DNA of 64,000 bases from Oculina patagonica (Eukaryota): assembly GCF_052425735.1 (NCBI RefSeq), contig NC_135765.1:1116001-1180000 (forward strand). The letters run 5' to 3'. A program made the position numbers and the translations under genes. Positions 17,618-50,727 of the stretch are shown piece by piece. Numbering within the stretch: the stretch's first letter is position 1; each line of letters opens with the position of its first letter. Under the pieces are notes generated by a model. The model had not been told where the DNA came from. It ran no database searches and saw nothing but the letters and a program-made list of their open reading frames with translations.

Positions 17618-20600
17618 ATGTACCTAGTTTACATTTTTATGTTGCTGGCTAGCTCGATCGCACTGGTGTCTTGTGAATATTGTGAACCGGTCACTGTAAG
17701 ATCATGCTCAAATGCAGGGTACAGATTCACTGCAAGATTTCCCGATGTGGATGGCACGCCCTATCAAGATTTTCACGCTGCTAGTCTGAACATATACATC
17801 CCGTTATTGGAAACGTGTTCACCAGATTGGGCCAGTACGATCTTATGTTCGCTGTACCTGCCGAAATGCGAAGAAGGACGAAGCACAGCATGGTCCCCTT
17901 GTCGTAAAGTTTGCACGCAGTTTGTCTCCGAATGTCAAAGTACTCTTCGAGCTGCAGGGCTAGCTGGAATGTTTACCGTGCTTTGCGATTTGCTACCTGA
18001 TGGAGACGGGCAGTCAAAAGAATGCTTTTATCCCTCCAACTTTAAGGACACTTCTTCGGGAGGTGAGAGTTTTGGGGCAATTATGTTTACTTGCCGTAGT
18101 TAATAAATTATGTATTTAAATGCATGCATATTTTCAGTAAGGTTATGCTAATATAACTAGTGGTAACCACAGGTTAGAAAGTGCGGGCCTTGACGCACTT
18201 ATACAAAGTACTGGTAGGCAGTGCCGATAATTATAAATAAACGACTGAACAAGGAGGACTGAAATGATCAAATGGACAATAGACAATTATTCTGAGTAAC
18301 GCGTCACGCAAGGATTTTTCGCACGCGGTGCAGTGTGAATTTAGATGTGATTTTTCTCAGTCGGTAAACTCGCTATGTTGTCAGTGTTATAACGAATTTC
18401 TCGACAATAACCGTTGTTGGAATCATTCGCTTTACCGTGGTTTATCTGTGATACAATCACAGCAAATGTTCTCAAAAGCAACACATAACGCCTTCAATGT
18501 CACAGAAGGTTTATCTAATGTGACAAGCTGTTTTTAAAACATCGCTCTTGGAGAACAGATTTTTCTCTTCCGGTGTTACGACAAACTGTCGTGATTAACA
18601 CTTTTTCGCATTCCGATCGTGCTTAGTGGAAGAACAAAAATTTTCAACTTCCGGTTCGGTCCTGGTTTATAAATGTGGCGCGCACGCGTAAAACGCAATC
18701 CGCTGGTCACTGTCAAGATTAGGGTTGCGGGCCTCTCTTGGGCCCGCAATAAGAACAATAAAGGTAACTGTTTTCAAATAAATTATTCACGTCGAAAATC
18801 TTTTGGCTTTTTTAATTTTTCTCCAGGGGAACTCAAGCTCTCCAATTTTTTAGCCAATTTGGTTATCTGTTGTATGTAGTTAATAAATTATGCATTAAAA
18901 TTAGAAGTGTCAATGGTCATGTAGCAGCTTTCACAAGGTCTCGCATGAATGACTCCCTAAAACAATAGAACAAACAACAGGAACAATGCCCCTAGCCCCA
19001 AAAACAATAGCAACTGCTTCACTAGAGGCCAGTAAAATTACAAGCTTAATTACAAGAGCAGCTACACTACTGGGGTCAATTAAACATCCTTTGGGTTTGG
19101 TTATTCAGCTGCGTTATTTGATCTTTACACAATCATGCACTGATGAAGGTCTCAAGAAACTTTTAGACTTTAAAAGGCTTTAAACTACAAGGAGTCGAAA
19201 AGAAGTTTGTAGCAGACGTGTCCAGAACTGTTAGATGCTGCTATGACATGCCACTGTGACATGCTGCCATGGCATAGAATTATTAAAAAGGTTGGAATCA
19301 TAGGCCAATTGCATCAAATTTGAGATTGTAAAATTTGTATTAATTATAAGGCATACCTTAGAGGTGTTGTTGTGCTCCTAATAAAGATGGACTGAAATGG
19401 AAAAATCTTCAATTGTCACCAGAAAAAAAAATGAAAATTTATTCATGCCGAATTCCAGAACCCTAATCAATCTGATACAATGGAGACATGTGGAGCATAT
19501 GAAATTGGGGTCATAATTACCCAAGAGAAACTGGAAACCAAATGGGTGAAAACCACAGCGGAAACCAAATCCAAAAAACCGCTAGTATTTTTTCCAAAAA
19601 CCAACAACCAAATACCAAAAAAGAAAAATCCACATGCCGCAAAAGACACCTTAAAAACACCTCAACCCCTCTCTAGGGGTGGTGAATGGTCCTTCAAAAA
19701 ATGCGTGTCTTGCAAAATTTTAGCCAAATTTCAGGGGTCTTGTCGTCTCAAATTTTTCTTTGACGCCTTCTCGGAGTCTTGATTTCTTTTGCAAGGCTAA
19801 AAAGGTCTCAGGCTCGCAGAAAATATATATAAGTCTCGCCGTCTTCGCAAAGTCTCGCATTTACCATTAGACACCCCTCCTCTCTGATTTTATTTTATTT
19901 TATTACAACATTTTGATATTTATTAATAATTTTAAACTGTTAAGGTTTACACTTCATGCAGTTATTTCATTTTACAGGACCAGTAACAAATGTGTGCTAT
20001 GATGTTGTCGACCAGAAATGCAAGAATGACCTGCACTACAGCAAAACATTAATTCCAACAAATTTACAAAAAGCAGAAGATACAATATTCAAAGTGGTCA
20101 TCGACAGCAACTGCTCAAAGGAGTTAGAAAAGTTTATCTGCTACACACAGTTTCCACCTTGCTATCCAAACCGACCAAGTGTGACATATATACCCTGCAA
20201 ATCGCTCTGCGATACAATCAACAAGAAATGCTGGAAACAGTTCATAAAATCTGGTCTACCATTGCCGCACTGTGATTATATTTATCCCAGGGAGGATAAT
20301 GCAACAGGTCTCTGTGAAGTGAAAGAGTGGCCTGCTCAATGGCCTAAGAAATTCAGACCACCCCCACCCCGTAAGTATGGTACATGTAGTACATAAGGTA
20401 GTGTTGGTGGGTATTTTTTGACACCATTTCTTACGTTTCAGCTGAATTAGCCTCACCATAGAGGTACCTGATAAACAAACAAATTAAGGTCCCTCGCCCC
20501 CATGAGTCTTTATAGCCAACATTGCACTTGTGTGGGGTGACCCTTTTATGTGGAATGGCACCAATTTTAGTATATTTTCACTCCAGTTTGCTTGCAGTTA

Positions 20601-23600
20601 GCTTTTATTTATTGATCAGGGCAATATTACATGTAATGGTATGCATTGAATCAATAGTAGTGTCCTAACCATCAGACAGGCTTTTAGCCAGGCGGCCGTC
20701 CAGCCGTCCAAAGGACGGCCACTTTTCAGAAATAGGTGATTTTCGACGGCCTGTTTTGGGTGGCAATTTACGAACTTCTGTGGTTAATGTAACAAAACAG
20801 TGTGTATAAATTAAAAAAACTTACATTCCTTTTTGCTCTCAAGAGTTGTTTTAGTCTTGCTGGCGTGTTTTTCTTCTCTATTTACACTTTTTTTAGCGAG
20901 TTTCCTTACTGTTTTGTTCGCATGAATCAAAGTTAAGCGAAGCGATTTCACAAGCAAAGCCGCTGTTCAATAATATTAACTCCCCAAGTCGTGCCCAGGC
21001 TGCTCTGCCAGGTGCTAAAAATAAATACGCACGTGGGTGCATATCCGTTCTTTCGTGTAAGTTCGTGGCTTGACAACTTCAAATTTCAATCACTGTTCAT
21101 AACAACTGGAGTTTCTGTCCCAAATATAGTTCAATGTTAAACAAGGTAAGTTGAGGAAAGGATGTAAAATTATCAAGGAAAAACGGCGGTTTAATAGCTT
21201 AATTGAAAGACGTTTACAGCTGCTCAGAATCGTGGAAATCACGTCTTAGAGGCTTCAATTTTTCAAAATTTTATGGGGGGGCATACCCCCAGACCCCTCT
21301 AGAAGCATGGCGCCTGCGGCGCCATGCTATGTGGGCCTTCGGCCCACAACAAAAATGGACGGCCACTTTCTAAATCCTGGCTAAAAGCCTGCCATCAGAT
21401 ACAAGCTAACCGCAAGCAAGCCAGAGTGAAAATAAACAATTAAATTCTGCTGAATAGGGTCTCTTTATGTACTAAGAAAGTGAAACCTGGCTTTTGAACA
21501 AGAATGAGGAGATCTGACAGACTGTCTGCAACCCTTCCAGATTGTTCACAAATGATGTAAACATCAAGTTAAGCACCTTCATCATCTATCATGTTCAAAC
21601 CTTGCTTTCATAGTGAGGCATGGTACCTAAAATTTCATGGAATTTTTATCATAGCATGCTCAAAAATCTTGGCAAATATAGTCTTGGCAAGCATTGTCTA
21701 ACATCCTAAATCCATCAAACTAAGGCATATGCGTCAACTGCTACTGTCGGAAAACCAATGTTGCACTGGCTTGTGGGTGGACAGACTTTAATCTAGTATA
21801 TAACCAGTGGCAGATCCAGGGGTGGGTGCAGGGGGTGCGAAAACAAATGATGTGGCCATTCCATAGTGGTGCACTCCCTCCTAAGAAAAATCCTGGATCC
21901 ACCCCTGTTAACCATGGTCAACTTAGTACTGAAATTGGTATATTAAATAATTTGTTGCATTATTGTTTCACCAGCCATTGGTACCTGTGAAGAACTCACT
22001 GTGAAGTCATGCCGCAATGCTGGATACAAATACACTGCAAAATATCCTAAATTTGGCGACAAGTCCTTTCAAGAGCATAAAGGAGACCTACTGGACATCC
22101 TTATTCCACCATTAACATGCTCCCCTTACAGTAGCTTAATTCTTTGTTCCCTGTTTCTTCCAAAATGTGTTCCTGGAAGTGGTACTCCCATGCTGCCATG
22201 CCGTCAAGTTTGCTTGGATTTTACCGACAAGTGCAAGGTTGAGCTGCAATTGGCCTCGACTCTGGGGATGACCATAGCACTGTGTGACCTTTTGCCAGTG
22301 TATGACGGGACCCCAAACAAGTGCATCATGCCAAAAAAATTCCTGATTAGTTCCACTACCCAGCTGAGTATGTTTGTTACATCCAGCTCTTCTGTTCTGG
22401 TTTGCAACTAGGATGTATTAGCGGAAATGCCTGTTGTTTTGGCCTGTACGTGTACATTTTTAAAACGGGTGGGAATGGCAAAATGGCGAGGAATCGTAAA
22501 AAGAAACACACAATTTTGAGAAAGGCTTCCTAGATTTTGAGATTGAAAGTTCTTTGTTTTTTTTTTGTGTTGTTTTTGTTTGTTTTATTTTATTTTAAAC
22601 AATAGACTGTTAAAACAATCTATAGAAAACTGCACCACCTTATAAATTTGCATTCTGTAATGTTAAGGGAATTTGTAGCTTATTTAGCGAGGATTGAAAT
22701 ATGTTTGTTTTTCTTTGCAGTCTCTGTCAGGGATGTCTGCTACCCAGTGACATCTACCAAGTGTTCCAAAGACCTCCACTATGACAAAACCTTTCTACCA
22801 ACAAAGGACCAAAAAGCTTCGGAACTCACCCTACTACAGCCTATTATAGACTCGGGTTGTTCGCCTGATATTGAAAAATATCTGTGCCAAACCCGTATGC
22901 CTCCATGCACCGCAGATATTTCTGTGGTCCACATGCCGTGCAGGGAGTTCTGTAAGAGAATCACTCGTGACTGTGGTGATGTTTTGAAGGCTCACAGTAT
23001 CCCTGCTCTGCACTGTGATTACTTATTTCCACCAGGAGACAGTTCAAATGGACTGTGTGACTTGAAGCGCTGGCCTGTCCCATGGCCGTGGAAAATCCCT
23101 GAACCAAATCCTCCTGTTTCAGGTAATATGATGAGAAAATTGGATGGTCAGTCTAGCTATCCAACAGTCGGTGGGTCGCTAGGTCGGTCGGTCAAGTCAG
23201 GCAGTCAGTCAGTCAGTCAAGCCAGGCAGGCAGTCAGTCAGTTAGTCAGTCAGTCGGTCAGTCATTGTCCGTCTGTACATCAGTCAGTCAGTCAGTCAGT
23301 CATTCTCCATCAGTCAGTCAGACAAATAGTAAATCAGTCAGTAATTCAATTCAGTCAGTCAGTCAGTCACAGTCAGTCAGTCAGTTGGTCGGTCGGTTGG
23401 TCGATCGGTCAGTCAGTCAATCAGTCAGTCAGTCAATTGATTGGTCAGTTGGTCTGTTGGTCAGTTAGTCAGTCAGTCTGTCACATAAAAGTCAAGAAAT
23501 AATAGAAATGCTGTTTGGGCTGTGTTTACTTTTTAAATTGCTTTTCAAAAATTGCTCTTTTTATTTTTTTTTAATTGAAGAAAATTGATTTCCAAGATAA

Positions 23601-26312
23601 GTTTTGTTTTTACCCTTCAAACATTTTTAAATAATTCACAGTTCCCTCAAATCATGGATGGGAGTGCAGGAAGGTCATAGTCTTGGCTCCTTATTTTGTT
23701 AGAGGCTCTGCCTAAGAAATCAGAGGGTTTGAGCAATCAGGATTTCACCGTATTCCTCACATATTTTTTTTTTACATGCACAGATGGTCCTACTAATTGT
23801 GTTCCTCTGAAGGCCAAAGCTTGTCTAGGTGCTGGTTATGACCTGACTGCAGACTTCCCACCAATTGATGGCAAGTCATATCAACAAGTCAAAGGAAAAA
23901 GTCTGGAGTTTTTCCTAAACTTTTTAAACCTCTGTTCACCATACGGCAAGACAATTATGTGTTCATTTTACATGCCAAAGTGTGTAGCAGGAGTGCAGAA
24001 GCCTGTTCTACCCTGTCGGAGTGTTTGTTTGGAGTTTGTGAGCAAGTGTCAGGGACTTCTGGCGCTGGCTTCACATGCTGGCATGTTTAGAGCCCTCTGT
24101 GATCTGTTACCACAGCAGGATTATTTACCCAACACTTGTTTTAAACCCAAGGGATTTAAACCAAGCACTGCTTCTACTGGTAAGGATTAACTGGCAATGA
24201 CTGTATATAATGTGTCAGATAATATATGTCTTAGCCAGGATTTAAAAAGTGGGAGTCCAAAATTTTTATAAGGCCTGACTTTGTTCCCATAGGAGGGCCT
24301 GACGAGCATGCAATGTGTTTTTCTGCAGTTATAAGTGCAAAGGTATCTTAAGATTTCCAAATATACAGTTATTCATATAAATTTTCTCTGAAAAGTGGTC
24401 GTCCATAGGACTCCTGGACCCCCACCTGGCTAAAAGCCTCCTTACTGCCAGAAATAAAGTAAGCCTTAGATCTAAAAGGTGTTTTCCTGTTATCAGACTC
24501 AGGTAATGAGTGCACCCTGGGCTCCTGGTTCATTTGTTACCCTTTAAGGCTCAGCATTTACTTACAATCCAATACTTACATTACTTACAATACAGAACCC
24601 TGTACCGATAAGAGCTGTGCAGTTTTAGAAGCTGTTCTGGTTGGAGGCTCTGACCAGTTGGCTGTTAAGATGAATATGACTGAGGAGTTAAACTCGGCAC
24701 CACCAAGATAGAACTTTTGAAAGTGATCATCCCATCCCAGCCTGTGCTGTCCCGTCCCTGCCCCCCTCCCCAATTCTATCACATCCCATCCCGTCCCGTC
24801 TCGTTCCCCCCCCCTCTCCCGTGTAATCGAATCCTATCAAATCTTGTTCCATTCCATCCCTATTTCTAGTCCAACGCACTCCCTTATCCCTCGATAGTTC
24901 ATTCTGCTTTCTGTTCAGCTGCATTGCCAATAGAATCATAACCACTTTCTTTCTGTTTTTCTTTTCCTAGTCGCTAGACGTGGTGGAGAGTGTAGCAAAG
25001 TTGTGGAACCAAAGTTCTGCCCCAAAGATCTGCATTATAATCAGACGTTTGTGCTGGAGAAAGATCAGACCAGCAAAACAGCACTGCAGAGCATCCTGAA
25101 CTCCAAATGTTCACCAGAGTTAGAAAAGTACCTGTGTTATACCACTGTCCCTCCATGTAAGCCGAACGATCTGTCCGTGTATATGCCTTGCAGATCTGTT
25201 TGTGAGCAGGTTTGTTCAAATTTCAACTCCTTTTAAGGGCAGACAAGCTTGCGATAACACTTTGACACGAATTGTTTCGTGTAAATCAAGCCTACAGTTG
25301 TTTGATTGCACCCCTCTAAAAATCTCGTAGGATTTTTTGGTTTCGATTTTTGGGTGAGGTTTGAAATAGGGTAGGGAAAATTGCGGCATATTTTGGTCTG
25401 AAAAAATTCAGGAATTGTGCTGCAGACCCCCATCCGAATTTTCGGGGAGTATTTCTTAATGGACAGTGCGCACATTTTATTCACGAGTCATAAAACAAAC
25501 AAGCATTATTTTTTGTTACTTTTTTTTAGGTCAGAAGAGATTGTGGAGGAGAATTCAAGAAAAACCGCATTCCTTTGCCAGACTGCTCTGTGATATATCC
25601 AGATGATGATGATCCTAAAAACAAAGGGCTATGTCACCTGACTGTGTTCCCAGTTGCTTGGCCTGCAAAGAGAGCAAAAGGTATGAATCACTGGGAAATG
25701 AGTGGGAGCGGGACTGGGAAGGGGGAGGGAGGATGCTTTCCAAAATGGTCAGCTACAGGACTTGTGCCAACTACTGAAACACCTAATCTTACTTTCTGCC
25801 CCTCCCTACCCAAGCAACTGCTTAACGTATAAAGATAATAATAAAAAGATAATAACAAAAGCTTTAATAAAGTGTCAAAGATCCGTAGATGAGGGGGAAA
25901 AGTGCCCTGTACTTGTCGTGGACACTAGACTGTAAAACAGTTGTTGTTTTTTTTATCTTAAATCGCTTTTCGTAAGACGCGAAGCGCCGACTCTCTGTCT
26001 TGATATTCGCTCCAGACTTTTTGTTTGAAGACCACGCGCGTTCGCAAAAAATTAATACGACTGTTTTGCAGTCTATACGTTGCAATTTACTTATAAAATT
26101 GCTTAAATCTTTTATTTACTGTCATTTCAGCCGTGGAGGAACGTCAGAAAGCGTCTAACAAAGGTGGACTGATAGCTGGTATTGTCATCCTGCTGGGTGT
26201 GTTAATTGCAGCTGTGGTGATAGGCGTGATGTATTTCCGCTGGCGCCGCGGCGCAAAGCAGTTTACTTCACAGCGGTTTGAGAACGTGGAGCCGCATGAA
26301 TCTAATGCATGA
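17618..26312 (+). CDS. Cluster gene A: type-I membrane protein with 6 tandem Frizzled-type CRDs (3 pairs), about 866 aa
   Basis: Exons 17618-18062, 19978-20370, 21975-22367, 22721-23122, 23784-24179, 24971-25209, 25530-25680 and 26131-26312 (2601 nt, open). Signal MYLVYIFMLLASSIALVSC. Each CRD has the 10-Cys Fz pattern (C.P.....C...GY..T; CSP; LCS.Y.PKC; PCR..C......C; C..LP...C). TM GLIAGIVILLGVLIAAVVIGVMYF; tail RWRRGAKQFTSQRFENVEPHESNA*. Confidence 0.9.
20677..21391. mobile_element. hAT-type MITE in intron 2 of gene A
   Basis: TIR caggcttttagccagg / cctggctaaaagcctg; perfect 8-bp TSD ccatcaga at 20669-20676 and 21392-21399. A related degenerate copy lies at about 24229-24380. Confidence 0.9.
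21805..21907. mobile_element. Short hAT5-like MITE
   Basis: cagtggcagatccagg / cctggatccacccctg; flanks ataac/ttaac. Confidence 0.55.
23165..23480. repeat. Degenerate (TCAG)n microsatellite in intron
   Basis: Long run of cagt/tcgg tetramers, which explains the SQSV-rich ORF tails. Confidence 0.95.
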
Positions 26313-30730: not shown

Positions 30731-33700
30731 ATGTAAGTAAAGCGGTAAATTGCCTTTGTTTTGAGCTGTGATGAAAACCATCGTGTATTGGCAATTGAAA
30801 ATAGCTACATAGTACTAGTGTGAAAATGAAATTTTCGCTTCCTTTCTCCCGCTTTCTCCTAACAGGTGTCAACAGCTTAAGTTCTTCGCTCTCCTGTTGT
30901 CTGTGATGTTTTGTATGCTGGGATTTTCTCGCGCTGAACTACAATGCGCCCTAGTCAACAGAACAGTAAACGGTCTTGAAAAAATATGTGGTTATGACTA
31001 CACCGCTAGCTTTGAATATCGTCACCATTTCAGTAGCGCATCGAACGCCGTCACGTCGTTAAAAAACCTTCTCAAAAATTGTTCGGATACAGTCGGCACC
31101 ATGATCTGTTCCTTGTTCGTACCGCGATGTACCGAGGAAATAAAAGGCCCGTATTTACCCTGCAGAGCCGTTTGCTACGACTACGCAACAAAATGTAAGG
31201 ATATTATTAAAGATAAAGGGCTTGAATGGACTGTGGCCATGTGCGACATCCTGCCGGAGAGAGATAACCCTCGCACTACTAAAGGTTACCGAGGGAGATG
31301 CTTTACGCCACCAAACTTCAAAGATAACGGCACAAGTAAGTGAACTATCTGTCGAACTAAACAGACAACTACTGCTTTTAGCTTAGAAACATTAACACGT
31401 TTTTACTTAGAGTGTTAACAATTGGCACTATAGATTGCATCATGCAAATGTCTCAGCACTTTCTAATCTTTTAGACAAAGCAGCTTTATCTGATTAATGA
31501 ATTGCTGCTTTTTAAAAGGCTTGAAATAGCTACAAAAATCGGTTTGCTCATTAAGAAGTTTTTGTCATTAAAAAGTTACAATTTGATCGAAATCTCCGGT
31601 TTTTTGGAGTTACCGTGTACGTGTATTGTATTTGTTATGACTACTGATGGCAGTCGAGGCCCCCTGGCAATTTGAAGGCGTTTGACTTTGGACTTCTAAT
31701 TGTTTAGAGCGCTGATGTAAAAATATAGTTGTACTCGTCAATAATATTAGACATTCACTTTATTGAGTTTAAATTTAAGTCAGGTAAAACAAAGCTAAAC
31801 ATAAGCAGACATATCGCCGAAGACGAACGTGTCTTGTCGCAGGTTGTTTGTTGACATTTTACCTAAAATCAATTATGTAGGTAATAACATTGTATAGAAA
31901 AAGTAAAAAATTATTCAGTGACTGTCGTGAATGTGATTGGCTAATTGGCGTATTTTGGCGCCAAATTGTCGTCCCTCGCTCGTGCCAGTTTTAACGGAGG
32001 AGAAGACAATAACACGCTTTTAGCTTTGCTATGCAACGTGTAATAATGAGATTTCAGAACCTAGCTAACTATGAACGCTTTAATGTATTGACTATCTTCG
32101 AGCTTTACTTACTTCCTGCGACTTAATTCGAAGAAAAGGTTTTCAACACGGTTTCCGGTCCTAGGATAACAAAAATAAACCCGAGATGCTATTCTCGGAG
32201 CCCTCGGAAGCAGTGCGCGGAGTGAAGGTCACGATGTTTTGAGCAATCCTGTGACAGTTTGTGTGGCATATACGAGGTAGTAGGCTCTTGGAGACAAAAA
32301 AGTGAAAGAAACGGCACTGCACTGCCGGGCATGCGCGCGACGAATTATAATCCGGACACGTGCACACGAAAACTGACGCTAACCTTAAAATGTCTTAACT
32401 TTCGAATGAAACGTAGGAACGTTAAATAGGAGTTTCTAATGTAAGATAAAGTCTGCGTTTGAGCCTAGTGAACCATTAGGCGAGGGAAGCTTATCCCGGT
32501 TTCCGTACCATGAAAAGACTAGGAGTATTTCTTCTCTCCCACGGATGGGATGCTAGTCCATCGCAGGATTACCTCCAGCATTAAATTAGCCGGTACCCAT
32601 TTATACACCTGGGTGGAAAGAGGCTCTGTGATTGTAAAGTGTCTTGCCCAATAACACAACGCGGTGCCCCGGCAAGGGCTTGAACCCGGACCGTTTGATC
32701 CAGATTCCAACGCGCTCACCATTTGGCCACCACGCCACACACGTTCAAGTTTGTAGCTATTACATGACCAAAGAAAATGCACCACCCAACTGATCTAGCA
32801 ATAGACAGTCCCATGGCTTGACAGATATTGTCCCAGTCCCATGGCGTGACACATGCGGGACTAGCTAGTCCCTATAAATCATATTATTTCACTTTGTAAT
32901 CTAACTGTGACTCGAATTATGACTATCTTCACAGGCTATAAGCACCAGTGCTCCGACATTGTGGTTCCCGCCTGCAAAGGCATCAAAGGCTATACTAAAA
33001 CAGTGGTGTCCGAGGTAGTCCAGAGAAAATACAGCTCCTGGATGGAAAGTAAAATCAAGCTCAATGCCAGCGATACCTGCAGTCAACCGCGAAAAGAGAT
33101 CATGTGCGCAGAGAACTTGCCTGCCTGTGTAGACGGCACCGCGGCATTTCTGTGTAGAGACAGTTGTTACAAGTTTTTTAACACGTGCGACACGCCATTT
33201 TTTTATCACAATGACATGTGTATGGAGTTTCCCACGAGAGAAGATACTCCGAAAGATTTGGTGATATGCAAACAGACTCACTGGCCCAGAGCAGAGAACT
33301 GGAAGTTACCTGAACATCCTGCTACAACAGGTAAAACGGGTATAGCAAGTTAATTGTTTGTTTGATTCTATTTTCTTTTACAATGGATCAAAATTATAAA
33401 ATTTAGAGTGTAGCCTGTTAACTGTTTGTTTTATTCTGGTTGTCAAATGTAGCCTTAAACTATATGGGTATAAAAGCATACTTAGTGCTTGCATGTACGG
33501 TCGTGTAACCGTCGAAAACGCCCAAGGAGTCTTATTTCAAATTTAAGAGGCGCTTACCTTAAGGCTACTTTTGTTAGCGCCTACTAATTTTAGCGATTTT
33601 AGCGAATTGGGCTAAAATCGCTAAATTTAGTGCTCGCTAAAATTTGTCTTGGTCAAATTTAATACTCGTTAAATTTGAGTACCTTCCCTTCCACCTCAAA

Positions 33701-36700
33701 GGGAAACAAAATTAGCATAGCTTTGTTCTTTCTGGCAATGCAAATGTTCGTTCAATTTCAAGTGAGTTTGTTTTTTTTTACTGAAAATTTATTTCCATCT
33801 TAGCCATATGTTCATTACAAAGCTAGTTTAAACAATATCACTAGTTTTTCATTTTATCAGAAAATCGCTAAATTAAATAGTCGCTAAATCTTGCTCTAAA
33901 ACATTGCTAACATTAGTAGCCGCTAAAAATAGTAATCTTAAGGTATTCGAGGCGCTCTTTCTTTCAAGCCCGCTCTTCCCCTAAGCTATCTATTACCCCT
34001 ATGTTATCTTACTTTTAAGCTGGTTTGTCAAGTCAATTTATAAACTGAGTAAAATAATAATTTTGAAGAAACTGTACTTTTGCAAAGTTATTTGTAACTT
34101 TTAATGACAGAATTTCTTAGCTTCCTCCAATGCAAATCGTAACTGCATATTATTCAAATTATATTGACTTAGATCATTTACAACACGGCGCAAACATGCA
34201 CGTTTTTTCTTCACTTATTGTTTTTTATTTGTTCGTATCTATACATTTTGTTGATCAGATCCACCAGGATCCGGTTCTTTTGTATTGTCCATTGGCCCTT
34301 TCTCAAGTTAAAAGTGCTATTTTTATGCCCTTTTATAGATATCCTTGACTTTCAGGCTAATTCTGTTATTTAACAAAAGCTGTTAACTTCTTTAGGTCCA
34401 ACAGTGACTCCTTCCATTCGAGGAACTTCAACCAAGACAGGTAAAAACCTTTCGTACTGTAGATCTTGCCTTCTTTGGCACTCTACAACAGCTAACCGAT
34501 AATGCGAATGAAGACTGAAGCTTAGTGTTCAGGCTGGTTCTCATATAATCGACTCTGTCGTTTCTATCGCCTCTTCAACTTCAAAAAGTTTTCTCGCGAT
34601 CGGAGCGATTATATAAGAACATTACAAAGACGATCGCTAACGTCTGCGGCGATTGGGGCGATCACGATTGCTTGGATCACCCGTGTTCTATCCTTCTAGC
34701 TTCTCTTTCCCTTCTTCGCCGTGAAACAGCAATAACTGAGAAGATAGGAGGCCGCCACGGGTTTTGCTTTTTCATTGAAGGCTGCCATTGTGTTGATCTA
34801 GGACTAAAATGATTGTTTTGTCTCAGTATTTGCAAACGATCGATGCGATAGAAACGATCGGGGCAATCTTAAGAGAACCAGGCTTAAGACATTTTAAAAA
34901 TACCTGTAGCGTATGTATCTAATACACAGAATCAAATGCAATTGACTTCAATTCGTTACCATGGAAATGTTTAAAGCAGTCAAACATCCATTCTTAACAT
35001 TTTTCTAAAACTGCTCTGTGCACGCCGGAATTTTTTTTAATTTTTTATTTTATTTTGTCTTATTGAAAAAAGGACATTTTAAAACTTTGTAGCAAAAGGT
35101 AAATTCGCAATCATCGGTGTTGCTGTGATAAAATGCAAAATGTGTCACGTAAGGCACCTTGAATTGTGTTTCGCTTTGGGGGATTTCTGTCACTGCTTGT
35201 AATTTACGCTAAACTCAGTGATAGACAATGATGTTGATATTTTTTCGTATTTTTCCTTTTTCTATCTACAGCAAACACTGTAACTGGAAAAAGCGATACA
35301 GGTAATTTTCACAATCTATTTCAACTCATTGCTTCACAAAAAGCGCGGTTTGCGTCTGTAGCTACAATTTGTTTCTACATTCTCTTTGAGTTTGTGCTGC
35401 TTCGTCATTTTGCTATAACGGGCGTTAGCAACAGTATTGATTCTTCCGGAACTTAGTGGTAAAAAGGACAAATTCTGTCAGGCTGTTTTAAGTGTAAAAC
35501 AAATTTTTTCATGTCTGTTATAATTCAAGTTATATTCGCTTAGAAAACGACTTATATACTGACCAACACGCCTCCTTTCTTTACAACTTGAAACCAAAAC
35601 AATAAACAGACATGTTTTTCACTAACGTTTCACCGAGCGCTATTTGTATGGCATTTAAAGATGTCCTTGTGTTTCGGACATACAGTAGAACCCCGTTAAC
35701 TCGAACTCGGATAACGCGAACAACCCCGCTAACTAGAACTAACTTCTATTTCCCTTGGACCCACTTGTCAGTCATTTTTACTCGGTTAACTCGAAAACCC
35801 CGCTAACTCGAACTGTTTTTCGTTTCCCTTCAGTTTGAGTTACCGGGGTTCAACGGTATTCTATTATACATGTACAACATCAGATATTTAACTTCTTTAA
35901 CCTCTTTAGGCCCAACAGTAAGAGGAGGGACATCACGCAAGACAGGTGAAGTGGCCTTCCATTGCTTGGCAATCTATTACTGAGCTAAGGGGCGAACTAG
36001 TTGACTTTTGAAGCCAACCCCCACCCCACCCGCACCCTCTTCAAAAAGACTGAAAAAAATATATATCTGCCCAGGAGCTCCTGGTCTGCCTTTTTGGTCA
36101 GAAAAAAATATTCTTTCCAAAAAGAAATCTTCCAAAACTCCCAGCCACTTCGTCAAAAGTCAACTGGCTCGCGGATGTAGAGCGCTTCAGTCCAAACCTG
36201 TGACGCATTTATCAATACACAGAATCAAGTGCAAGCGACGTCAAATCTCTTTACCATGGAAACGCCAAAAGAAGCCAAATGTGCACTTTTTACGCTTCGC
36301 TTTAAAAACTACTCTGTGCAAGGAAGTTTTTGTTTTTCACATAGGGAGAGTCAGTGAAGTTAGATTTAATACAGCCAGTATCTGATTAAATTTGACCCCA
36401 CCCTTCCCCCTCCTCTTTTAACAAAAAGGCAGCAATCGACCTACAGGACCCTACCGAGGAGGGTAAAGAACTACGGGAGCTACAGGAACAAAAGTAACTG
36501 CCACATGATCTTTTATGGTAGACCACGTGACTGAAAAGTGACGTAACATACCAACTTTGTTCCCAGGGCTTTTCCGTTAGTAATTTATGTGATATGATGT
36601 TTAAAACGTCCAAAGTGTCCTTCAAATGTTATAGTCCCTTGAAAGGACGATATTTTAAGTTTTGTTTCTTGGTTTTTTTTAATTTTTTTTTTTTTAATTC

Positions 36701-36969
36701 TGGTGTTTAATGTTTTTGTTTGTTTATTCACAGATAATAATAATGTTTTACCACCTGGTATGCACGCACGAGGACATCCTGAAGGCAAAAAATCCAGCTC
36801 CTCTAAACTAACTATAGGCCTTGTAGTCACATTTATTTTGCTTCTTCTAATTGCAATAGGTGTTGTAGGATTCTTCTTGTATAGGAGAAAACGAAGTCAT
36901 CAGTTTGATTATCAGAAACAAGTCCTTTACTCTGATGACAAAGCAGAAGAATTTGAAATTTTTACTTGA
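30731..36969 (+). CDS. Cluster gene B: 2 Fz-type CRDs, microexon-encoded Thr-rich stalk and TM, about 404 aa
   Basis: Exons 30731-30732 (AT), 30866-31335, 32935-33330, 34396-34440, 35272-35301, 35910-35945 and 36734-36969 (1215 nt, open). Signal MCQQLKFFALLLSVMFCMLGFSRA. TM LTIGLVVTFILLLLIAIGVVGFFLY; tail RRKRSHQFDYQKQVLYSDDKAEEFEIFT*. Microexon inclusion is inferred. Confidence 0.85.
32445..32735 (-). mobile_element. tRNA-derived SINE
   Basis: Minus strand reads gtggtggccaaatggtgagcgcg (A box) ... gggttcaagccc (B box) ... ggtgtataaatgggtaccggc ... tggactagcatcccatcc. Homologous to 401-650. Confidence 0.8.
33557..33943. mobile_element. TA-flanked MITE
   Basis: TA|ccttaag.ctact...agtaatcttaagg|TA, with internal tagcg/cgcta repeats. 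Confidence 0.65.
34531..34885. mobile_element. Degenerate Harbinger-type MITE
   Basis: aggctggttctcatat ... taagagaaccaggct|taa, with gcgatcg internal repeats. Confidence 0.5.
35683..35856. mobile_element. Tc1/pogo-type MITE
   Basis: TA|cagtagaaccccgttaactcgaac ... gagttaccggggttcaacgg|TA. Confidence 0.7.
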
Positions 36970-40320: not shown

Positions 40321-43300
40321 ATGAAGCTTCTTTCGTTTGTTTTATTTCTTGCTTTGGAAACTTTGCTCGTGGACTACGCTTCGAGTTCATCGTGCCCGCC
40401 GTTAAATCGCACGTTATTTAACGACTGCATACAAGCGGGCTACAATGTTTCTAACTTTACTTCAAGCCGATCGCCAAACGTACTTTCCAGTTTAATTGCG
40501 AACATGCAGAACAAGTTTAAAAACTGTTCTTCGTTCTCAAGTCTAATGACTTGTTCGGTCCATCTACCGAAATGTTCGGCGGGGACATCAACGTTACCAT
40601 GTAAAGAAGTATGCAAGAATTTTGTTGCAGATTGTCAACACAGTTCAAGCGCGGATGACGGATTGATAGCTTTATTCAGAGGCATTTGTGAGCTGCTTCC
40701 TTCAAGCAAATGTTTGCCAAAGCCAAACAATTTAAATAATACTAACCCTGGTAAGTGAATAACGTTTACTTTAATAAATTCCCTAATTTCGTAATCCGGG
40801 CTGAAGCAAGGCTAGATTGTGAATATAATTATAGCTCATTAGTAGTCATAAAGCTGTGTTTATTAGCAAAATAATATTCTTTGAAGCATGCTATTTGTTA
40901 TTCCAAAGGGAAATAAGGTGATTAGTCTGCTGGCTTATGTAATTGACTGTATCCTTATTAGGCGTAAACGCAACATGCACGCAAACTGCCAAGGTTCACC
41001 GGCTTCAAACAGAATATTTGACGCACCAAGTTAATCTCTTGGGAATAGACCTTAACAGGTGTCTATACATAGTAAAAGCACTTCGAACCATTACCTGTTC
41101 CTCGAAAACAAATAACAATACCCAGTTGACAAAATTGACGTTTTTCAGCCAAATTTACACATGAATTCAATATACCAATGTCATTTGGATCGCAACGTTT
41201 TTCGCAGCCTTCGGAAATAACAAAATGTAGACATAATAGTGTTGTTACGAATGCATATTTAAAAACTTTCCACTTTCATTCTGTTTCTTCGTTTCTGTTT
41301 ACAGAAGCCGTCAAGTGTGAGGAACTCGTCATCAAACAGTGCCAAAATGCTGGCTATAACTCCACATCAGTGTCAAATGCATACCAAAAGATGGTCCAAT
41401 CAAGCACAATCTTTCAAGACAGTGACGCGAACTCCGCGCTACGAAAAATAATATGCATGGAAATTGCACCACCATGCGATGCCAAAAATAACCAGAAATT
41501 ACTGGTTCCCTGTAGGTCCATGTGTGATGAAGCGTATAATAAGTCACGTTCAAAGTTCCTTGATGTCTTCAAGTCCCGGGACTATTGCTCAGCATTTCCA
41601 GAGAACACACATGTAGATGGAAAAGAGTACTGTTCGCTGCAGGCTTGGCCAGTTAATGGGTTTTGGCCCAGTGGTTTGTGGACATCCCTTACCTCAGCAG
41701 GTATTTTATAAGCAATAGACTGTTCACAGGCCTTCTATTTTTCAACGCAAAAAAGAACGCGCGCAAGAGAAACAGTGAGCGAAGCACAAGGGGGTGGACG
41801 GTGGGTGCTATTTTCTTTTCCCCCTCGGACTTTCCACAAGTTGCTTGAAATTATTCAAAAAGTTGCTCGAAATCTCTAAAAAGGTGCTTGAAGGTTTCCC
41901 CAAAAATCCAAGAAAAGGTGCTTTTGATTAAAAAAAGTTGCCCCAAAGATCCAAAACGCTGCTTTTTATTAAGAAAACTTCTCCAAATATTGCTAATTCC
42001 CTTTGAAGGTATAAGATTTCTAATCAGTTTCATGCAATTTCCCTGCAACAGAAGTATCTAAATAACATTTAAAGGTTAAAACTTGTTGGAAAAATCATGA
42101 AGATGTCGATGACGTCATGTTTGCTGACTAATTTAGTAATGTTTTAAAATGAGTCGAAAGCTGAATCGTGTTCGGATGTTCCACGAAAATCTTCGGCAAA
42201 CTTCGTTAACCTTCGGAAATGTGCGTATGGCTTTTGGACAATTTTCAGAGATCTTCAGTCTAGACATTGTTCAAAATGCAACAAGTTGCACAGATGGAAA
42301 AAAGTTGCTTAAAGGGGAAAAAAATGTTCGAAATATGAAAAGTTGCCAAAAAGCTGCCGAGCAACTTGTGAAAAGCCCTATTGCCTTCTCCTCCCCCCTC
42401 GTGCCTGCAGGTTTGCGTTGGCGTCCAGTTCACTCACCATTCCTTCCCTGCATTCAACTATCGAAGAAATATACGAAAAAAATAGAGGGCTGTGAACAAT
42501 CTATATTAACAATAAAAGCACTGATCCTTGCGGCAAGGAGACGAAAAACAGATAGGAGATTAAAGAAAAACAGTGATGTACAAATGAAAATATGATATTT
42601 GCCAATATTTGGTTTGGAAAAAAATAATCGTTTACGTGGAATTGTTTCTCAAGTATTTTACCTCAAACTTAAGTTTTTTCTGCAAAGGAACCGATTATTT
42701 TCCTCATCGGTTTGTCTCTGTGGCTTTGCCTTCAAATATATAAAAACATCTGCAATATCACAGCGACAAACGGATAAGTGGTGCCGGATCTTTTGAATTC
42801 CTGTAGTTTTATGCCATGTACCTTCCATGGTGTTGAGTAAAACCTACAACACTTACCAATTTTGTTTTAATCCTTCATTTAGCCCAACAACAGAACTGTA
42901 CAGTAGACGCACCGAAGGACAATTCAACCACGTCTGCACCTGTGGTTAATACAACCACGTCTGCACCTTCGGGCAATACAACCACGTCTCCACCGACCAC
43001 GACTGCACCTGTGGTTAATACAACCACGTCTGCACCTTCGGGCAATACAACCACGTCTCCACCGACCACGTCTGCACCTCAGGGCAATACAACCACGTCT
43101 CCACCGACCACGTCTGCACCTAAGGGCAATACAACCACGTCTCCACCGACCACATCTGCACCTCAGAGCAATACAACTACGTCTCCACCGACCACGTCTG
43201 CACCTAAGGGCAATACAACCACGTCTGCACCGACCACATCTGCACCTAAGGGCAATACAACCACGTCTGCACCGACCACATCTGCACCTAAGGGCAATAC

Positions 43301-44540
43301 AACCACGTCTCCACCGACCACGTCTGCACCTCACGGCAATACAACCACGTCTCCACCGACCACGTCTGCACCTAAGGGCAATACAACCACGTCTCCACCG
43401 ACCACATCTGCACCTAAGGGCAATACAACCACGTCTCCACCGACCACGTCTGCACCTAAGGGCAATACAACCACGTCTCCACCGACCACGTCTGCACCTA
43501 AGGGCAATACAACCACGTCTCCACCGACCACATCTGCACCTAAGGGCAATACAACCACGTCTCCACCGACCACGTCTGCACCTAAGGGCAATACAACCAC
43601 GTCTCCACCGACCACGTCTGCACCTAAGGGCAATACTACCACGTCTCCACCGACCACATCTGCACCTAAGGGCAATACAACCACGTCTCCACCGACCACG
43701 TCTGCACCTAAGGGCAATACAACCACGTCTGCACCTTCGGGCAATGCAACTACGACGAAACCAACAGGCAATTTAACCACGCTTGCACCCAAGACCAATG
43801 GAACCGCGCCTGCACCCAAGACCAATGGTACCAAGCCCACACCAACATCTCATGTAACCACGCCTGCGGCCACTTCCAAGAAAACCACGACTGAATCGCA
43901 CAAGTCAAGTACAAGTAGTAATCCTTCTTCTGGAACGAAAGGTAAGAACCGTAACGTTGTGCGCAACTTTCCAAACCAACTACAGTACTAATATAATATA
44001 CACAGACAAAAGAAAGGAGTTTGTCTAAAGTGGTGTTCATACTTTGATAAGGGATCGCGTTTCATTTGATTTATTTCTCGTGTTTTTGTCTTGAAAACAA
44101 GGGAAATATAGACCCAGTGCAAATATGGCTGCCGTTTTTTCGCTCGTTTTTTTTTTTTTTTTTTTTTTTGGGAAAAAAAAAATAAAGTATGGGTATTGCT
44201 TACAGGAAAATTTATTTCGTTTTCAACAAAATATCGAAAAGGATTAACGTTAAAAAACGTGTAATTCTATCCAAATGCCTTTTAACTAATAATTACAAAT
44301 AACGCATTTCATGCAATCAGTCTCTTGTTAAACTTTATTTTCATCTTCACTTAAGGTTCACCCCCAGTGGTCAGTGCACACAAAGGTGGCAAAATGTCTG
44401 GAGGAGCTATCGCTGGTACAGTGCTTGGCATACTAGCACTCCTAGTTGCCATTGTGGTTGGTGTCATTTGTTTCAGGAAGCACCACAAAACGAGAAGCCA
44501 ATACAGACACAGTCTTATGGTGGATATGGATGAACTGTAA
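40321..44540 (+). CDS. Cluster gene C: 2 Fz-type CRDs, mucin stalk of about 350 aa and TM, about 689 aa
   Basis: Exons 40321-40750, 41305-41700, 42883-43941 and 44356-44540 (2070 nt; all introns phase 1). Signal MKLLSFVLFLALETLLVDYASS. TM GAIAGTVLGILALLVAIVVGVICF; tail RKHHKTRSQYRHSLMVDMDEL* (last exon not in the ORF track). Confidence 0.88.
43060..43740 (+). repeat. Coding VNTR, 42-bp unit, about 16 copies (TTSAPKGNTTTSPP)
   Basis: Unit caccgaccacgtctgcacctaagggcaatacaaccacgtctc, nearly identical copies, in frame in gene C exon 3. Confidence 0.95.
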
Positions 44541-45789: not shown

Positions 45790-47518
45790 TAGAAAGAGGC
45801 GGGACCACTGAGGTAAGGATGAGAACCAAGGCTAAAAGGAACGGAAACGGGAAGTGCAGATTCTCCACCCCCCCCCCCCCCCCCTTCGTTTCTCAGGCAT
45901 TTTTTTCATGGTTACAGCGCTCTGTTAAGAAATTTAGACTCATCACATTTTACAAATTATTTAATAACGATCCAACATTACTGCATCGTCATCAATTTTA
46001 ATACAGTTTTAATGCACCTGGCATAACGAACTTATTCTGTGTTTCTGATACATATTGTAAACTGGAATTGTAGCGTGGCACCACTGCTGTTTACTCATAC
46101 CATTTATAGAAATTACTCTTTTTCGTGAGAGTTCTAACGTTGTCCCAAAGCAAAAACAACAAAAAAACGGAGCAGAACTGGCGCGTTTTGCGACTTTGTC
46201 AGAGCATCCATTGCAATAAAACACTGACTGACCGACTAACTTTCAATGAAAACTAAAAAAGCCACAAATTTTATCTCTGTTATAAAGAAATTGGTCCTTG
46301 GTTTTATCTGATGTGTGTTTATCGAATTACAGGTGCACTTATGACGTTTTTTAGAGCACAAGCTAGGCTAGACCTTGAGCAACTCTTGCACTTCTCTTGT
46401 GCTGTCCAAACCCCTCCCGCGCGTACCCATAATAACAAGTCAAAAGACGTAAGCTTTGACGAACCAATTACTGATTTAAAAACACACCAAACAAGACCTA
46501 AAAGAAAGGAGCAGGCTTTGTATGAGTGTAAATCTAACTAAACATTTCGCTAAATGGAGATACCCCAGGATCTCTATCTAGACTCTATCAGTTATGTGGC
46601 CTTTAACCGGGCTAGGCCGCTAGTTATGTCCACACTCCTAATCTTCACTGCTCCGTTGCAGGGATATCATTGCCTTGTTTTCTATATCCCATGCTGGGTG
46701 CGCGACTACGCCACTTCCACCAAATGAGCCCCGCCAGTGCGAGCCCTACAATACTCAGGGACACCACGACAGCCACAGCAATGACCCATCCTTTAGGCCC
46801 TTGACGTTGAGGTTCTTCTGTTGTCGGTGCTTCTGTCGATCCTGTGAATAGACCCATAAACTGTTATTAGAAGTTACACGACCTGTTAAAGTACAGTACC
46901 AATTGTGTGAAACGAGTTGAACTCCTGATCAAGAGGTCTGTGTTTGAGCGCTGACAAGGATAATTATGTTCTATTTTAAGGCAAGATACTTTACTTTTTT
47001 CTCGCTCACAGTGCCTCTTTCCACTTGGCCATCCACTGGATACATGTGAAATGTAAAATGCGAACTGTAAAGGCAACGTGACAACATTCTATCGGAAGCA
47101 GAGGCAATTCATGTCGTTCGACTAGCATTCCAATGACAACCTCGTTCCCAGGGCATTTCCTTTGGTACGGAATTCGGAATTACCAAGGGAAAAGCCCTGG
47201 AAATGTGATTTTTTCAACGAGGGATAACTCGATCAGCAATGACTCCTAGCTATAGCTGCTTCAAGCCACAAGAAACGCGGATAATCTCCGGTAATGTGAG
47301 CCAGTGGGTCGACTGCAACTCCACCTCACTAAACTAAATAAAATAGTTATTAAATATAGCATTGACTAACCCAGATACTTGAACCAATCGAATGAGCTAG
47401 GGTATTCTGTGCGATCACAGAAGCCGTGACTAGAGTCTCCCTCCGCTAGCAAACTGCAATACTCTGCACCCATGTTATGCTGACTGAACAAAAATCACAG
47501 TATAAGTATAAATACTAG

Positions 47519-47812
47519 TTATGCAACGCTTTCGAGTGGTATACTACGGAATATCCCACATCACTTGTATTTCTCGGTATACACACGAGCCTTTAGGCGA
47601 GGTGTACCAAGAAAATAAAGTGACAAGTGGGATATTCCATAGTATACCACGAGAAAGTTTTTCTATTATACCATGCCATAGAAAATACGCTACTAAATTT
47701 CGTCGAGAATACAGTCGCAGCGCACGATGGGAAGGTTGGGTTGAATACCGTCGAATATACAACGGCTTTCCTGTATTCTGATTGGCTGTATTTTCTATGG
47801 CATGGTATAAAG
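47519..47812. mobile_element. Repeat/MITE insertion in gene D intron, absent from gene E
   Basis: Inverted motifs ataccatgccatagaaaatac / gtattttctatggcatggtat; no counterpart in the homologous gene E intron. Confidence 0.55.
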
Positions 47813-49296: not shown

Positions 49297-49558
49297 AAAA
49301 CAAAGACTGGGAAATGGAATTGAAGCAAAATTTTGATTAGGAATAGAAGTTATACGCCCCCCTCCCCCCCCCCCCCCAAAAAAAAAACAAAGACTGGGAA
49401 ATGGAATTGAAGCAAAATTTTGATCAGGAATAGGAGTTATACGCCCCCCTCCCCCCCCCCCAAAAAAAAAACAAAGACTGGGAAATGGAATTGAAGCAAA
49501 ATTTTGATCAGGAATAGGAGTTATACGCCCCCCTCCCCCCCCCCCCCCTCCGCTTCAG

Positions 49559-49604: not shown

Positions 49605-49607
<3 letters not shown>

Positions 49608-50655: not shown

Positions 50656-50727
<72 letters not shown>

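What the first reader, a model, noticed from the sequence alone, without database searches (positions are those of the whole stretch)
17618..25680. The repeating unit is an a/b CRD tandem with a WPxxW cap; gene A is a triplication of that unit
Odd CRDs of gene A share C.NAGY..TA.FP..DG..YQ...LCSLYLPKC...AGM...LCDLLP. Even CRDs share KC.KDLHY.KT...I.DS.CS.ELEKY.C.T..PPC and end with GLC....WP..WP. The same a-then-b order and Trp-Pro cap recur in B (HWPRAENW), C (AWPVNGFWP) and E (EWPSPFYW). The 'a' type replaces the Fz F.WPE..C segment with a hydrophobic stretch. Inference: an obligate two-domain module, possibly a covalent mimic of the lipid-bridged CRD dimer of Frizzleds, with six binding sites in gene A giving avidity.
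Basis: partly seen in the sequence, partly recalled or inferred. Interest (0 to 1): 0.7.

Follow-up and report, generated by a model that had tools for sequence, protein, structure and literature searches.

The report
Coral membrane proteins with paired Frizzled domains
This coral locus is a cluster of uncharacterised single-pass membrane proteins whose outer part is one to three fixed pairs of two different Frizzled-type lipid/Wnt-binding domains, a design also found in sea anemones but never studied.

Summary
The window is Oculina patagonica (stony coral) chromosome DNA. Gene A equals RefSeq XP_078378798.1, an 'uncharacterized protein' of 866 aa. It encodes six Pfam Fz domains that alternate strictly between two types, a and b. 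Each domain is one phase 1-1 exon, except CRD6, which is split.

In a tree of 96 CRDs, a and b each form one well-supported clade (SH-aLRT 100 and 97). Both clades exclude the coral's own Frizzleds and the multi-Fz proteins of other phyla.

All 12 units of the locus run a then b; the locus continues about 50 kb past the window. Every b ends in C-x4-[W/Y/F]P-x2-5-W. Nematostella, Pocillopora and Actinostola have orthologues, so the unit predates the coral/anemone split.

It encodes a transmembrane helix and a short tail. All genes of the cluster are type I membrane proteins, not secreted ones, and gene C carries a mucin-like stalk.

AlphaFold2 gives the a-b pair pTM 0.79. The whole pair superposes on independent AFDB models of family members (TM 0.70-0.88) but not on other tandem-Fz proteins (about 0.35). 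This is predicted support for a defined a-b interface.

The 'lipid-bridged dimer mimic' and avidity ideas remain untested. Function is inferred only: surface binding of Wnt or another lipid-bearing ligand.

The parts
17618..18062 (+). Gene A exon 1: signal peptide plus CRD1 (type a)
   Evidence: ORF and Pfam Fz E 6.8e-15. GTGAGA donor, phase 1. Identical to the N-terminus of P0160.
19978..20370 (+). Gene A exon 2: CRD2 (type b) with cap EWPAQWP and a Pro-rich linker
   Evidence: Transcript contigs end and join here. Pfam Fz E 5.6e-12.
21975..22367 (+). Gene A exon 3: CRD3 (type a)
   Evidence: Spliced contigs join 20370 to 21978, with 3 differing letters at the junction, and 22367 to 22721. 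Pfam Fz E 6.8e-13.
22721..23122 (+). Gene A exon 4: CRD4 (type b) with cap RWPVPWPW
   Evidence: Joints 22367 to 22721 and 23119(+3) to 23781(+3). Pfam Fz E 2.4e-13.
23784..24179 (+). Gene A exon 5: CRD5 (type a)
   Evidence: Joints. Pfam Fz E 6.1e-14.
24971..25209 (+). Gene A exon 6: first two thirds of CRD6 (type b)
   Evidence: Joints 24178(+1) to 24970(+1) and 25207(+2) to 25528(+2). The intron is phase 0.
25530..25680 (+). Gene A exon 7: end of CRD6 with cap VFPVAWP
   Evidence: Contig pieces end at 25680 and the contigs continue beyond it. GTATGA donor.
26131..26309 (+).
   Evidence: Hydrophobicity scan. The only phase-compatible acceptor lies here. Matches the C-terminus of transcript-derived P0001 and of P0160.
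30906..36966 (+). Gene B: a exon 30906-31335, b exon from 32935 (cap HWPRAENW), TM and tail ORF 36643-36966
   Evidence: HMM scores a 152/b 40 and a 30/b 146. Splice prediction only. TM. Orthologues are P0095 and Nematostella P0171.
40321..44537 (+). Gene C: a exon 40321-40750, b exon from 41305 (8 Cys, cap AWPVNGFWP), mucin-like stalk exon within 42837-43988 (17 copies of a 42-bp repeat), TM ORF 44355-44537
46648..51507 (-). Gene D: near-copy of E. The a exon has one extra T in a T-run, which shifts the frame. b exons lie in ORFs 48797-49150 and 47369-47494 (cap EYPSSFDW). TM ORF 46648-46863
   Evidence: 90% nucleotide identity to the E a exon.
52846..57448 (-). Gene E: a exon 56965-57448, b exons 55304-55634 and 54912-55026 (cap EWPSPFYW), TM ORF 52846-53241
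60315..60590 (-). Orphan TM-and-tail exon of the E/D kind. Its CRD exons are not in the window and are probably those at window-equivalent 77-87 kb

Best explanation
SHOWN. Gene A (17618-26309, + strand) is O. patagonica LOC144661954. It is a type I single-pass membrane protein: signal peptide, six Frizzled-type cysteine-rich domains, TM helix and a 27-residue tail. The six domains are three copies of a heterotypic pair.
- Type a is close to canonical Frizzled CRDs. It keeps hydrophobic residues at the Fz8 lipid-groove positions, has lost the F-x-W-P motif, and ends in a conserved C-F-x-P-x-x-F.
- Type b is divergent and ends in C-x4-WP-x2-5-W.

The gene sits in a tandem cluster of at least 10 genes. 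Each is built from one, two or three a-b pairs plus a TM exon, and gene C also has a mucin stalk. The a-b pair is an ancient unit that duplicates as a whole. It is shared with sea anemones, so it is at least as old as the hexacorallian ancestor.

PREDICTED. a and b pack into one rigid two-domain module.

INFERRED. The proteins have no signalling domain and display 1-3 preassembled CRD pairs at the cell surface. They most likely act as surface binders (co-receptor, presenter or sink) for a lipid-bearing ligand. Wnts are the prime candidate, because the a type is most like Fz8/Fz5 CRDs. Gene A is the multivalent version.
For: Gene model:
- Spliced contigs.
- P0001 C-terminus.
- Identity to P0160 = XP_078378798.1.
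- TM exons for every gene.

Fz identity:
- Pfam.
- PDB sequence hits: Fz8 at E 3e-13 for a, Fz4 at E 4e-4 for b.
- Foldseek TM 0.72-0.79 by target to Fz8/5/4 CRDs.

a/b classes:
- HMM classification.
- Tree with a at 100 and b at 97 SH-aLRT, each a single change.
- Every full-length protein with a strong a has a strong b after it.
- Nematostella P0018 is abab+TM; P0171 and P0140 are ab+TM.
- Correlated divergence: r 0.60, 0 of 2000 permutations.

Module:
- AF2 pTM 0.79, mean pLDDT 82, a-to-b linker pLDDT 72-79.
- The whole pair superposes on AFDB A7SA89 (TM 0.88), A7T2T4 (0.87) and A0A3M6TL94 (0.70 at 22% identity).
- Tandem Fz domains of fish, urchin, amphioxus and corin give TM 0.33-0.36 with rmsd 14-21 A.

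Groove:
- At Fz8 Q71, F72, P74, L75, M122, Y125 and F127, A1 has I, Y, P, L, L, A, L (alignment).
- The Fz8 numbers come from my own residue count and recall. The cognate FZD5 groove residues are listed in PMC6333880.
Against: - No experiment or expression pattern bears on function, and no paper on the family was found.
- The two-chain complex test did not reach its mark, which is no evidence either way.
- The b-a control model (pTM 0.48) used only 4 sequences, so it does not cleanly show that only a-b is rigid.
- The AFDB agreement is prediction against prediction.
- The groove positions are not hydrophobic in the B- and E-type a domains (alignment). A common lipid ligand for the whole family is therefore doubtful.
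- Tandem expansion, a probable pseudogene (D) and at least 133 Fz matches in the genome look like a fast-evolving recognition family rather than core Wnt machinery.
Confidence: 0.55

Rival explanations
1. Reader's specific model. The a-b pair is a covalent, intramolecular equivalent of the fatty-acid-bridged Frizzled CRD dimer. The two grooves meet to form one continuous U-shaped cavity that buries a Wnt acyl chain, and the WPxxW cap seals it. Gene A has three (or six) such sites for avidity.
For: - A defined a-b geometry is predicted.
- The a type of gene A keeps hydrophobic groove positions.
- Lipid-bridged alpha-helical CRD dimers with a shared U-shaped cavity are documented for FZD5/7/8/4 (PMC6333880; PMC5458758).
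Against: - The geometry of the predicted pair could not be compared with the FZD dimers, because no coordinates were given.
- The cap is modelled with low confidence: pLDDT about 57 and below 50.
- The b type is only weakly like canonical CRDs (E 4e-4) and lacks the F-x-W-P groove segment.
- The FZD dimer is two-fold symmetric, whereas a and b share only 23-36% identity where alignable.
- The complex test gave no verdict.
Confidence: 0.15
2. Non-Wnt recognition receptors. The CRD pairs bind other hydrophobic or glycan ligands (sterols, free fatty acids, microbial or symbiont lipids, or protein ligands). The family evolves by birth and death as a surface recognition or adhesion repertoire.
For: - A tandem cluster of at least 10 genes, with a near-duplicate pair D/E at 90% identity, one copy frameshifted.
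- At least 133 Fz matches in several tandem arrays genome-wide.
- Mucin-like stalk in gene C.
- Groove residues vary between the A, B and E types.
- From general knowledge: the Fz-CRD fold also binds sterols (Smoothened) and non-Wnt proteins (Norrin with FZD4; PDB titles).
Against: - The A-, B- and E-type orthologues are kept roughly one-to-one between coral and sea anemone. This argues for conserved rather than fast-turnover roles.
- The a type is closest to Fz8/Fz5 CRDs.
Confidence: 0.25
3. No functional pairing. The a/b alternation is only a historical trace of one old duplication of a two-exon block. The domains are independent beads on a string.
For: - Other multi-Fz proteins (medaka and killifish, shrimp, Montipora) also show period-2 alternation of their own CRD types. 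This is what duplication of two-domain blocks yields.
- Their tandem domains show no fixed geometry.
- The complex test gave no verdict.
Against: - No aa, bb or lone-a architecture is seen among full-length members across Scleractinia and Actiniaria.
- The a-to-b junction carries an invariant C-x2-P-x2-F spacing (C-F-x-P-x-x-F in most units), whereas the b-to-a linker is Pro-rich and variable.
- pTM is 0.79 and the same geometry appears in family members at 22-38% identity.
Confidence: 0.15

Closest known systems
Frizzled receptor CRDs (FZD8/FZD5 class; PDB 1IJY, 4F0A, 5URY)
   Same: - Ten-cysteine Fz fold.
- The a type aligns end to end with Fz8 CRD at 32% identity (E 3e-13).
- Foldseek TM is 0.72-0.79 by target.
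- Residues at the lipid-groove positions are hydrophobic in gene A's a domains.
   Different: - No seven-pass Frizzled domain; there is a single TM helix and a short tail.
- The F-x-W-P motif is replaced.
- The domains come in covalent heterotypic pairs, one to three per protein.
Secreted Frizzled-related proteins (sFRP, Sizzled, FrzB)
   Same: An extracellular Fz CRD without a signalling domain, hence a plausible ligand-binding modulator. Weak sequence hits to Sizzled (E 3e-5) and sFRP3 (E 6e-4).
   Different: sFRPs have one CRD plus an NTR domain and are secreted. These proteins have 2-6 CRDs, no NTR domain and a TM anchor.
Other multi-Fz-domain proteins: corin (2 Fz), and uncharacterised proteins of Montipora (9-10 CRDs), Penaeus chinensis (13), Oryzias melastigma (10), Nothobranchius (6), Antedon (9)
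   Same: Several Fz domains in one chain. Some (fish, shrimp) also alternate between two CRD types.
   Different: - Their CRDs fall outside the a and b clades.
- They are not discriminated by the a and b HMMs.
- Of 12 checked with a crude hydropathy scan and motif search, none shows a C-terminal TM helix or the cap.
- The tandem-Fz AFDB entries from other phyla do not share the a-b geometry (TM about 0.35).
- Corin is a type II protease with LDLa and SRCR domains.
Nematostella vectensis LOC5510975 (XP_032236114.2, abab+TM), LOC116617516 (ab+TM), LOC116611633 (ab+TM); Pocillopora 'FZ domain-containing protein' A0A3M6TLL6
   Same: - True family members.
- Same a-then-b order.
- Same cap.
- Same TM anchor.
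- Mirrored positions in the a and b clades.
   Different: The number of pairs differs: 2 in the Nematostella A-type protein against 3 here. All of these proteins are uncharacterised.

Membership tests
Frizzled-type cysteine-rich domain (Pfam Fz, PF01392) | Score above Pfam's gathering threshold (32.1 bits) | tested here: met
   CRD1-5 score 46.6-56 bits each. P0160 has six stretches and 259.7 bits in all.
Frizzled-type cysteine-rich domain (Pfam Fz, PF01392) | Ten conserved cysteines in the canonical spacing | tested here: met
   All six CRDs of gene A and B1, B2, C1, E1 and E2 have 10 Cys. C2 has 8. Of the 20 Cys columns in the 10-unit a-b alignment, 19 are invariant and one is at least 90% conserved.
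Frizzled-type cysteine-rich domain (Pfam Fz, PF01392) | Mainly alpha-helical CRD fold superposable on solved Fz CRDs | tested here: met
   AF2 model against PDB Fz8/5/4 CRDs: TM by target 0.72-0.79, probability 1.00. This is a prediction, not a solved structure.
Frizzled receptors (class F GPCR) | Seven-transmembrane Frizzled domain (PF01534) after the CRD | tested here: not met
   Pfam finds Fz only. There is one TM helix and a 27-aa tail.
sFRP family | Secreted protein with a single CRD followed by an NTR (netrin-like) domain | tested here: not met
   No NTR hit. Each protein has 2-6 CRDs and a C-terminal TM helix.
ROR/MuSK receptor kinases and corin/MFRP | Fz domain combined with a kinase, Kringle, Ig, LDLa, CUB or protease domain | tested here: not met
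   No such Pfam hits in P0160, P0018, P0171, P0140, P0133 or P0095.
Hexacorallian a/b paired-CRD membrane proteins (family delimited here) | Type a CRD directly followed by type b CRD, each falling in its own clade | tested here: met
   Tree. HMM classification. 12 of 12 units in the locus follow this order.
Hexacorallian a/b paired-CRD membrane proteins (family delimited here) | Cap C-x4-[W/Y/F]P-x2-5-W after the last Cys of b, and C-F-x-P-x-x-F after the last Cys of a | tested here: met
   Variants: FP in A6, YP in D2, and no second Trp in NvecA_4.
Hexacorallian a/b paired-CRD membrane proteins (family delimited here) | C-terminal single TM helix with a short basic-start tail | tested here: met
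   Genes A-E, I and J. P0018, P0171, P0140, P0133 and P0095.
   Model coordinates and PAE are not returned. The complex test gave no verdict.

The most novel reading that the evidence does not exclude
The a-b pair is a hard-wired heterodimeric version of the transient, Wnt-lipid-bridged Frizzled CRD dimer. Hexacorallia would then use membrane-tethered, mono- to trivalent 'pre-dimerised' CRD modules to capture or present Wnts. That would be natural evidence that the 1 Wnt : 2 CRD arrangement is physiological.
Probability: 0.12. Interest if true: 0.8.

Novelty: new variant of a known kind. Interest (0 to 1): 0.5.

Why it matters
Whether Frizzled CRD dimerisation around the Wnt acyl chain matters in vivo is still open (PMC6333880). 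A conserved protein family in which two different CRDs are permanently joined, with a predicted fixed geometry, offers a natural and tractable model. It could be tested by expressing a, b and a-b and measuring lipid and Wnt binding.

The family also adds an undescribed class of candidate Wnt or lipid surface binders to cnidarians, the animals in which Wnt-based axis patterning is best conserved. Orthologues exist in the genetically tractable Nematostella. Finally, it shows that much of the large Fz-domain count in coral genomes lies outside Frizzleds and sFRPs.

Tried and rejected
- Complex prediction with a1 and b2 as separate chains scored 0.30 and 0.15 against a mark of 0.34, so the controls were not run. 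This is no verdict and counts neither for nor against binding.
- The b2-a3 control fold gave pTM 0.48, but also lower domain pLDDT because only 4 sequences were available. I do not count it as a clean control.
- A wider alignment padded with single-exon fragments (A2) was too noisy (704 columns, no invariant column) and was not used for folding.
- The look-up of encoding contigs for P0009 returned no DNA.
- Two of the three cluster look-ups gave no organism names for most single-exon hits. The range outside Hexacorallia therefore could not be settled.
- ESM Atlas searches by features and by shape gave only generic Fz clusters.
- Six literature searches and two paper look-ups found no description of the family.
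- C-mannosylation of the cap is rejected. The motif is W-x3-W or longer, not W-x-x-W.
- An activin-receptor fusion as a family feature is rejected. It is seen only in one Actinostola gene prediction and is absent from its closest O. patagonica relative, gene J.
- The three-CRD gene 180 kb upstream (C8:937-940 kb) has canonical F/Y-x-W-P CRDs, and only weak branches (87 and 74) place them beside a or b. It is not a demonstrable ancestor.

Full report
**What is there**

The window is intron-bearing animal DNA with about 40% GC. ORF listing and Pfam show Fz domains (PF01392) on the + strand between 17.6 and 25.7 kb.

Contigs from four public runs, 93-97% identical to the window, are spliced. They give the junctions 20370/21975-8, 22367/22721, 23122/23784, 24179/24971 and 25209/25530, and they continue beyond 25680. 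With the predicted first donor at 18062, every CRD is one symmetric phase 1-1 exon of 393-402 nt. The exception is CRD6, which a phase-0 intron splits.

A hydrophobicity scan found a TM-helix ORF at 26097-26309. It has a single phase-compatible acceptor at 26131. A transcript-derived relative, P0001 (86% identical), ends in the same juxtamembrane, TM and tail sequence.

The assembled model is identical to P0160 = XP_078378798.1, 'uncharacterized protein LOC144661954 [Oculina patagonica]', 866 aa.

**The observation**

All the quoted motifs are present. Aligned to mouse Fz8 CRD (E 3e-13), the a type carries GLAGMFTVLC where Fz8 has GFAWPDRMRC. The b type is much further from solved CRDs (best hit Fz4, E 4e-4).

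HMMs built from gene A alone call B1, C1 and E1 'a', and C2 and E2 'b'. B2 is ambiguous.

**The locus is larger than the window**

The genome holds at least 133 Fz matches, and the window is C8:1116001-1180000. I fetched the flanks. The window-trained a and b HMMs classify ten more CRDs downstream, always a then b in the direction of transcription:
- genes G and H on the minus strand;
- gene I (abab plus TM);
- gene J (ab plus TM).

An MCM-like gene follows. That makes 24 CRDs in 12 units. Every gene in the window has a TM exon, and gene C has a stalk exon with 17 copies of a 42-bp Thr/Ser/Pro repeat. Every b domain of the locus ends in C-x4-[W/Y/F]P-x2-5-W.

**Relatives**

phmmer of CRD1 against 1.84 billion representatives gave 740 hits. 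Named members are all 'uncharacterized' or 'FZ domain-containing'.

The strongly a/b-typed members are hexacorallian:
- Nematostella P0018 (abab plus TM);
- Nematostella P0171, P0196 and P0140 (ab plus TM);
- Pocillopora P0133;
- an unnamed coral B-type protein, P0095;
- Actinostola P0067.

No full-length protein with a strong a lacks a following b.

Long multi-Fz proteins of Montipora, Penaeus, Oryzias, Nothobranchius and Antedon are not discriminated by the a and b HMMs.

The tree has 96 CRDs and was built with IQ-TREE using LG+C20. Type a (18 rows) is one side of a branch with SH-aLRT 100. Type b (19 rows) is one side of a branch with SH-aLRT 97. Each needs a single change of label, and both exclude the coral's own Frizzleds and all other multi-Fz CRDs.

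The subclades mirror each other. The A, B and E types each include their Nematostella orthologue in both the a and the b clade. Across 18 units, a-a identity correlates with b-b identity (r 0.60; 0 of 2000 permutations reach it). The pair therefore duplicates as a unit and predates the coral/anemone split.

Gene A's three units are 44-49% identical to each other, about as far as they are from the Nematostella units. It is an old triplication, not a recent one.

Fish and shrimp multi-Fz proteins show a period-2 alternation of their own that is unrelated to a/b.

**Is a-b a physical module?**

AF2 on a1-b2 with a 10-row alignment of a-b units gave mean pLDDT 82 and pTM 0.79. The a-to-b linker scored 72-79, and the cap fell to about 57.

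Against AFDB clusters, the whole pair (about 265 residues) superposes on family members:
- A7SA89, residues 311-573: TM 0.88;
- A7T2T4, residues 25-290: TM 0.87;
- A0A3M6TL94, residues 34-280: TM 0.70 at 22% identity;
- A0A2B4SZP5: TM 0.57.

Tandem Fz domains from other phyla give TM 0.33-0.36 with rmsd 14-21 A. This is prediction against prediction, but it is family-specific and consistent.

The a-to-b junction has an invariant C-x2-P-x2-F spacing (C-F-x-P-x-x-F in most units), whereas the b-to-a linkers are Pro-rich and variable.

A b2-a3 control fold gave pTM 0.48 with a linker below 50. It had only 4 sequences and lower domain confidence, so it is confounded. The two-chain complex test gave no verdict.

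**Function (inferred)**

There is no domain other than Fz, and the tails are short. The a domains of gene A have I, Y, P, L, L, A and L at Fz8 Q71, F72, P74, L75, M122, Y125 and F127. The Fz8 numbers are my own residue count and recall; the cognate FZD5 groove residues are listed in PMC6333880. The B- and E-type a domains have polar residues at several of these columns.

I therefore favour surface binding of a lipid-bearing ligand, with Wnt first, acting as presenter, co-receptor or sink. Non-Wnt recognition is a serious rival, given the birth-and-death look of the cluster: D is a 90% copy of E with one extra T in a T-run, and there are many Fz arrays genome-wide.

The 'covalent mimic of the lipid-bridged dimer' idea is neither supported nor excluded.

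**Novelty**

The genes are annotated but uncharacterised, and I found no paper on them. Three features are, as far as I could find, undescribed:
- the heterotypic pairing of two CRD types;
- the membrane anchor;
- conservation of the unit across Hexacorallia.

I file this as a new variant of a known kind (Fz-CRD proteins).

Noticed in passing
window 42837-43988 (+), repeats 43023-43735: Gene C has a mucin-like stalk exon: 17 copies of a 42-bp unit at 95% matches, encoding TTSAPKGNTTTSPP. It lies between the b CRD and the TM exon. Gene A has no stalk.
   Followed up: partly
window 46648-51507 (-): Gene D is a 90% nucleotide copy of gene E. It has one extra T in a T-run of the a exon (around 51060-51120), which shifts the frame. 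Its cap reads EYPSSFDW. It is either a pseudogene or a homopolymer assembly error.
   Followed up: partly
window 60315-60590 (-): An E/D-like TM-and-tail exon with no CRD exon in the window. The nearest upstream CRDs on that strand are 17 kb away, beyond the window end, and no TM exon was found for gene H. G and H may therefore form one abab gene that uses this exon.
   Followed up: partly
G000 C8:1180001-1230000 (loci L031-L036), window-equivalent 77-113.5 kb: The cluster continues with ten more CRDs in strict a-b order: genes G and H (minus strand), I (abab) and J. It ends before an MCM-like gene.
   Followed up: yes
window 23183-23483 (+), intron 4 of gene A: A (GTCA)n microsatellite of about 75 copies artificially extends the CRD4 ORF as SQSV repeats. 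It shows very high depth in transcript contigs. Intronic stretches 20491-21475 and 24234-24430 also behave as dispersed repeats.
   Followed up: partly
whole genome G000: There are at least 133 Fz-domain matches. They include other tandem arrays at C14:3.40-3.44 Mb, C9:8.48-8.49 Mb and C4:39.03-39.10 Mb, and a 1.7-kb-period array on contig C1350. This is a large Fz-domain expansion outside Frizzleds and sFRPs.
   Followed up: no
P0067 (Actinostola sp. KAK3747491.1), residues 250-318: An a-b pair is followed by an activin/TGF-beta receptor ectodomain (PF01064, E 8.9e-8) in a 330-aa gene prediction. This may be a real fusion or merged neighbouring genes. It is absent from the closest O. patagonica relative, gene J.
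   Followed up: partly
P0013 and P0021 (medaka, killifish), P0011 (shrimp), P0012 (Montipora): Long multi-Fz proteins of other phyla also alternate between two CRD types of their own: odd and even domains fall in separate clades. Blocks of two different CRDs may be a recurrent design.
   Followed up: partly
G000 C8:937441-940278 (loci L018, L039): 180 kb upstream lies a gene with three canonical CRDs that keep F/Y-x-W-P. Its first and third domains sit weakly (support 87 and 74) beside the a and b clades. It is a possible but unproven relative of the ancestor.
   Followed up: partly
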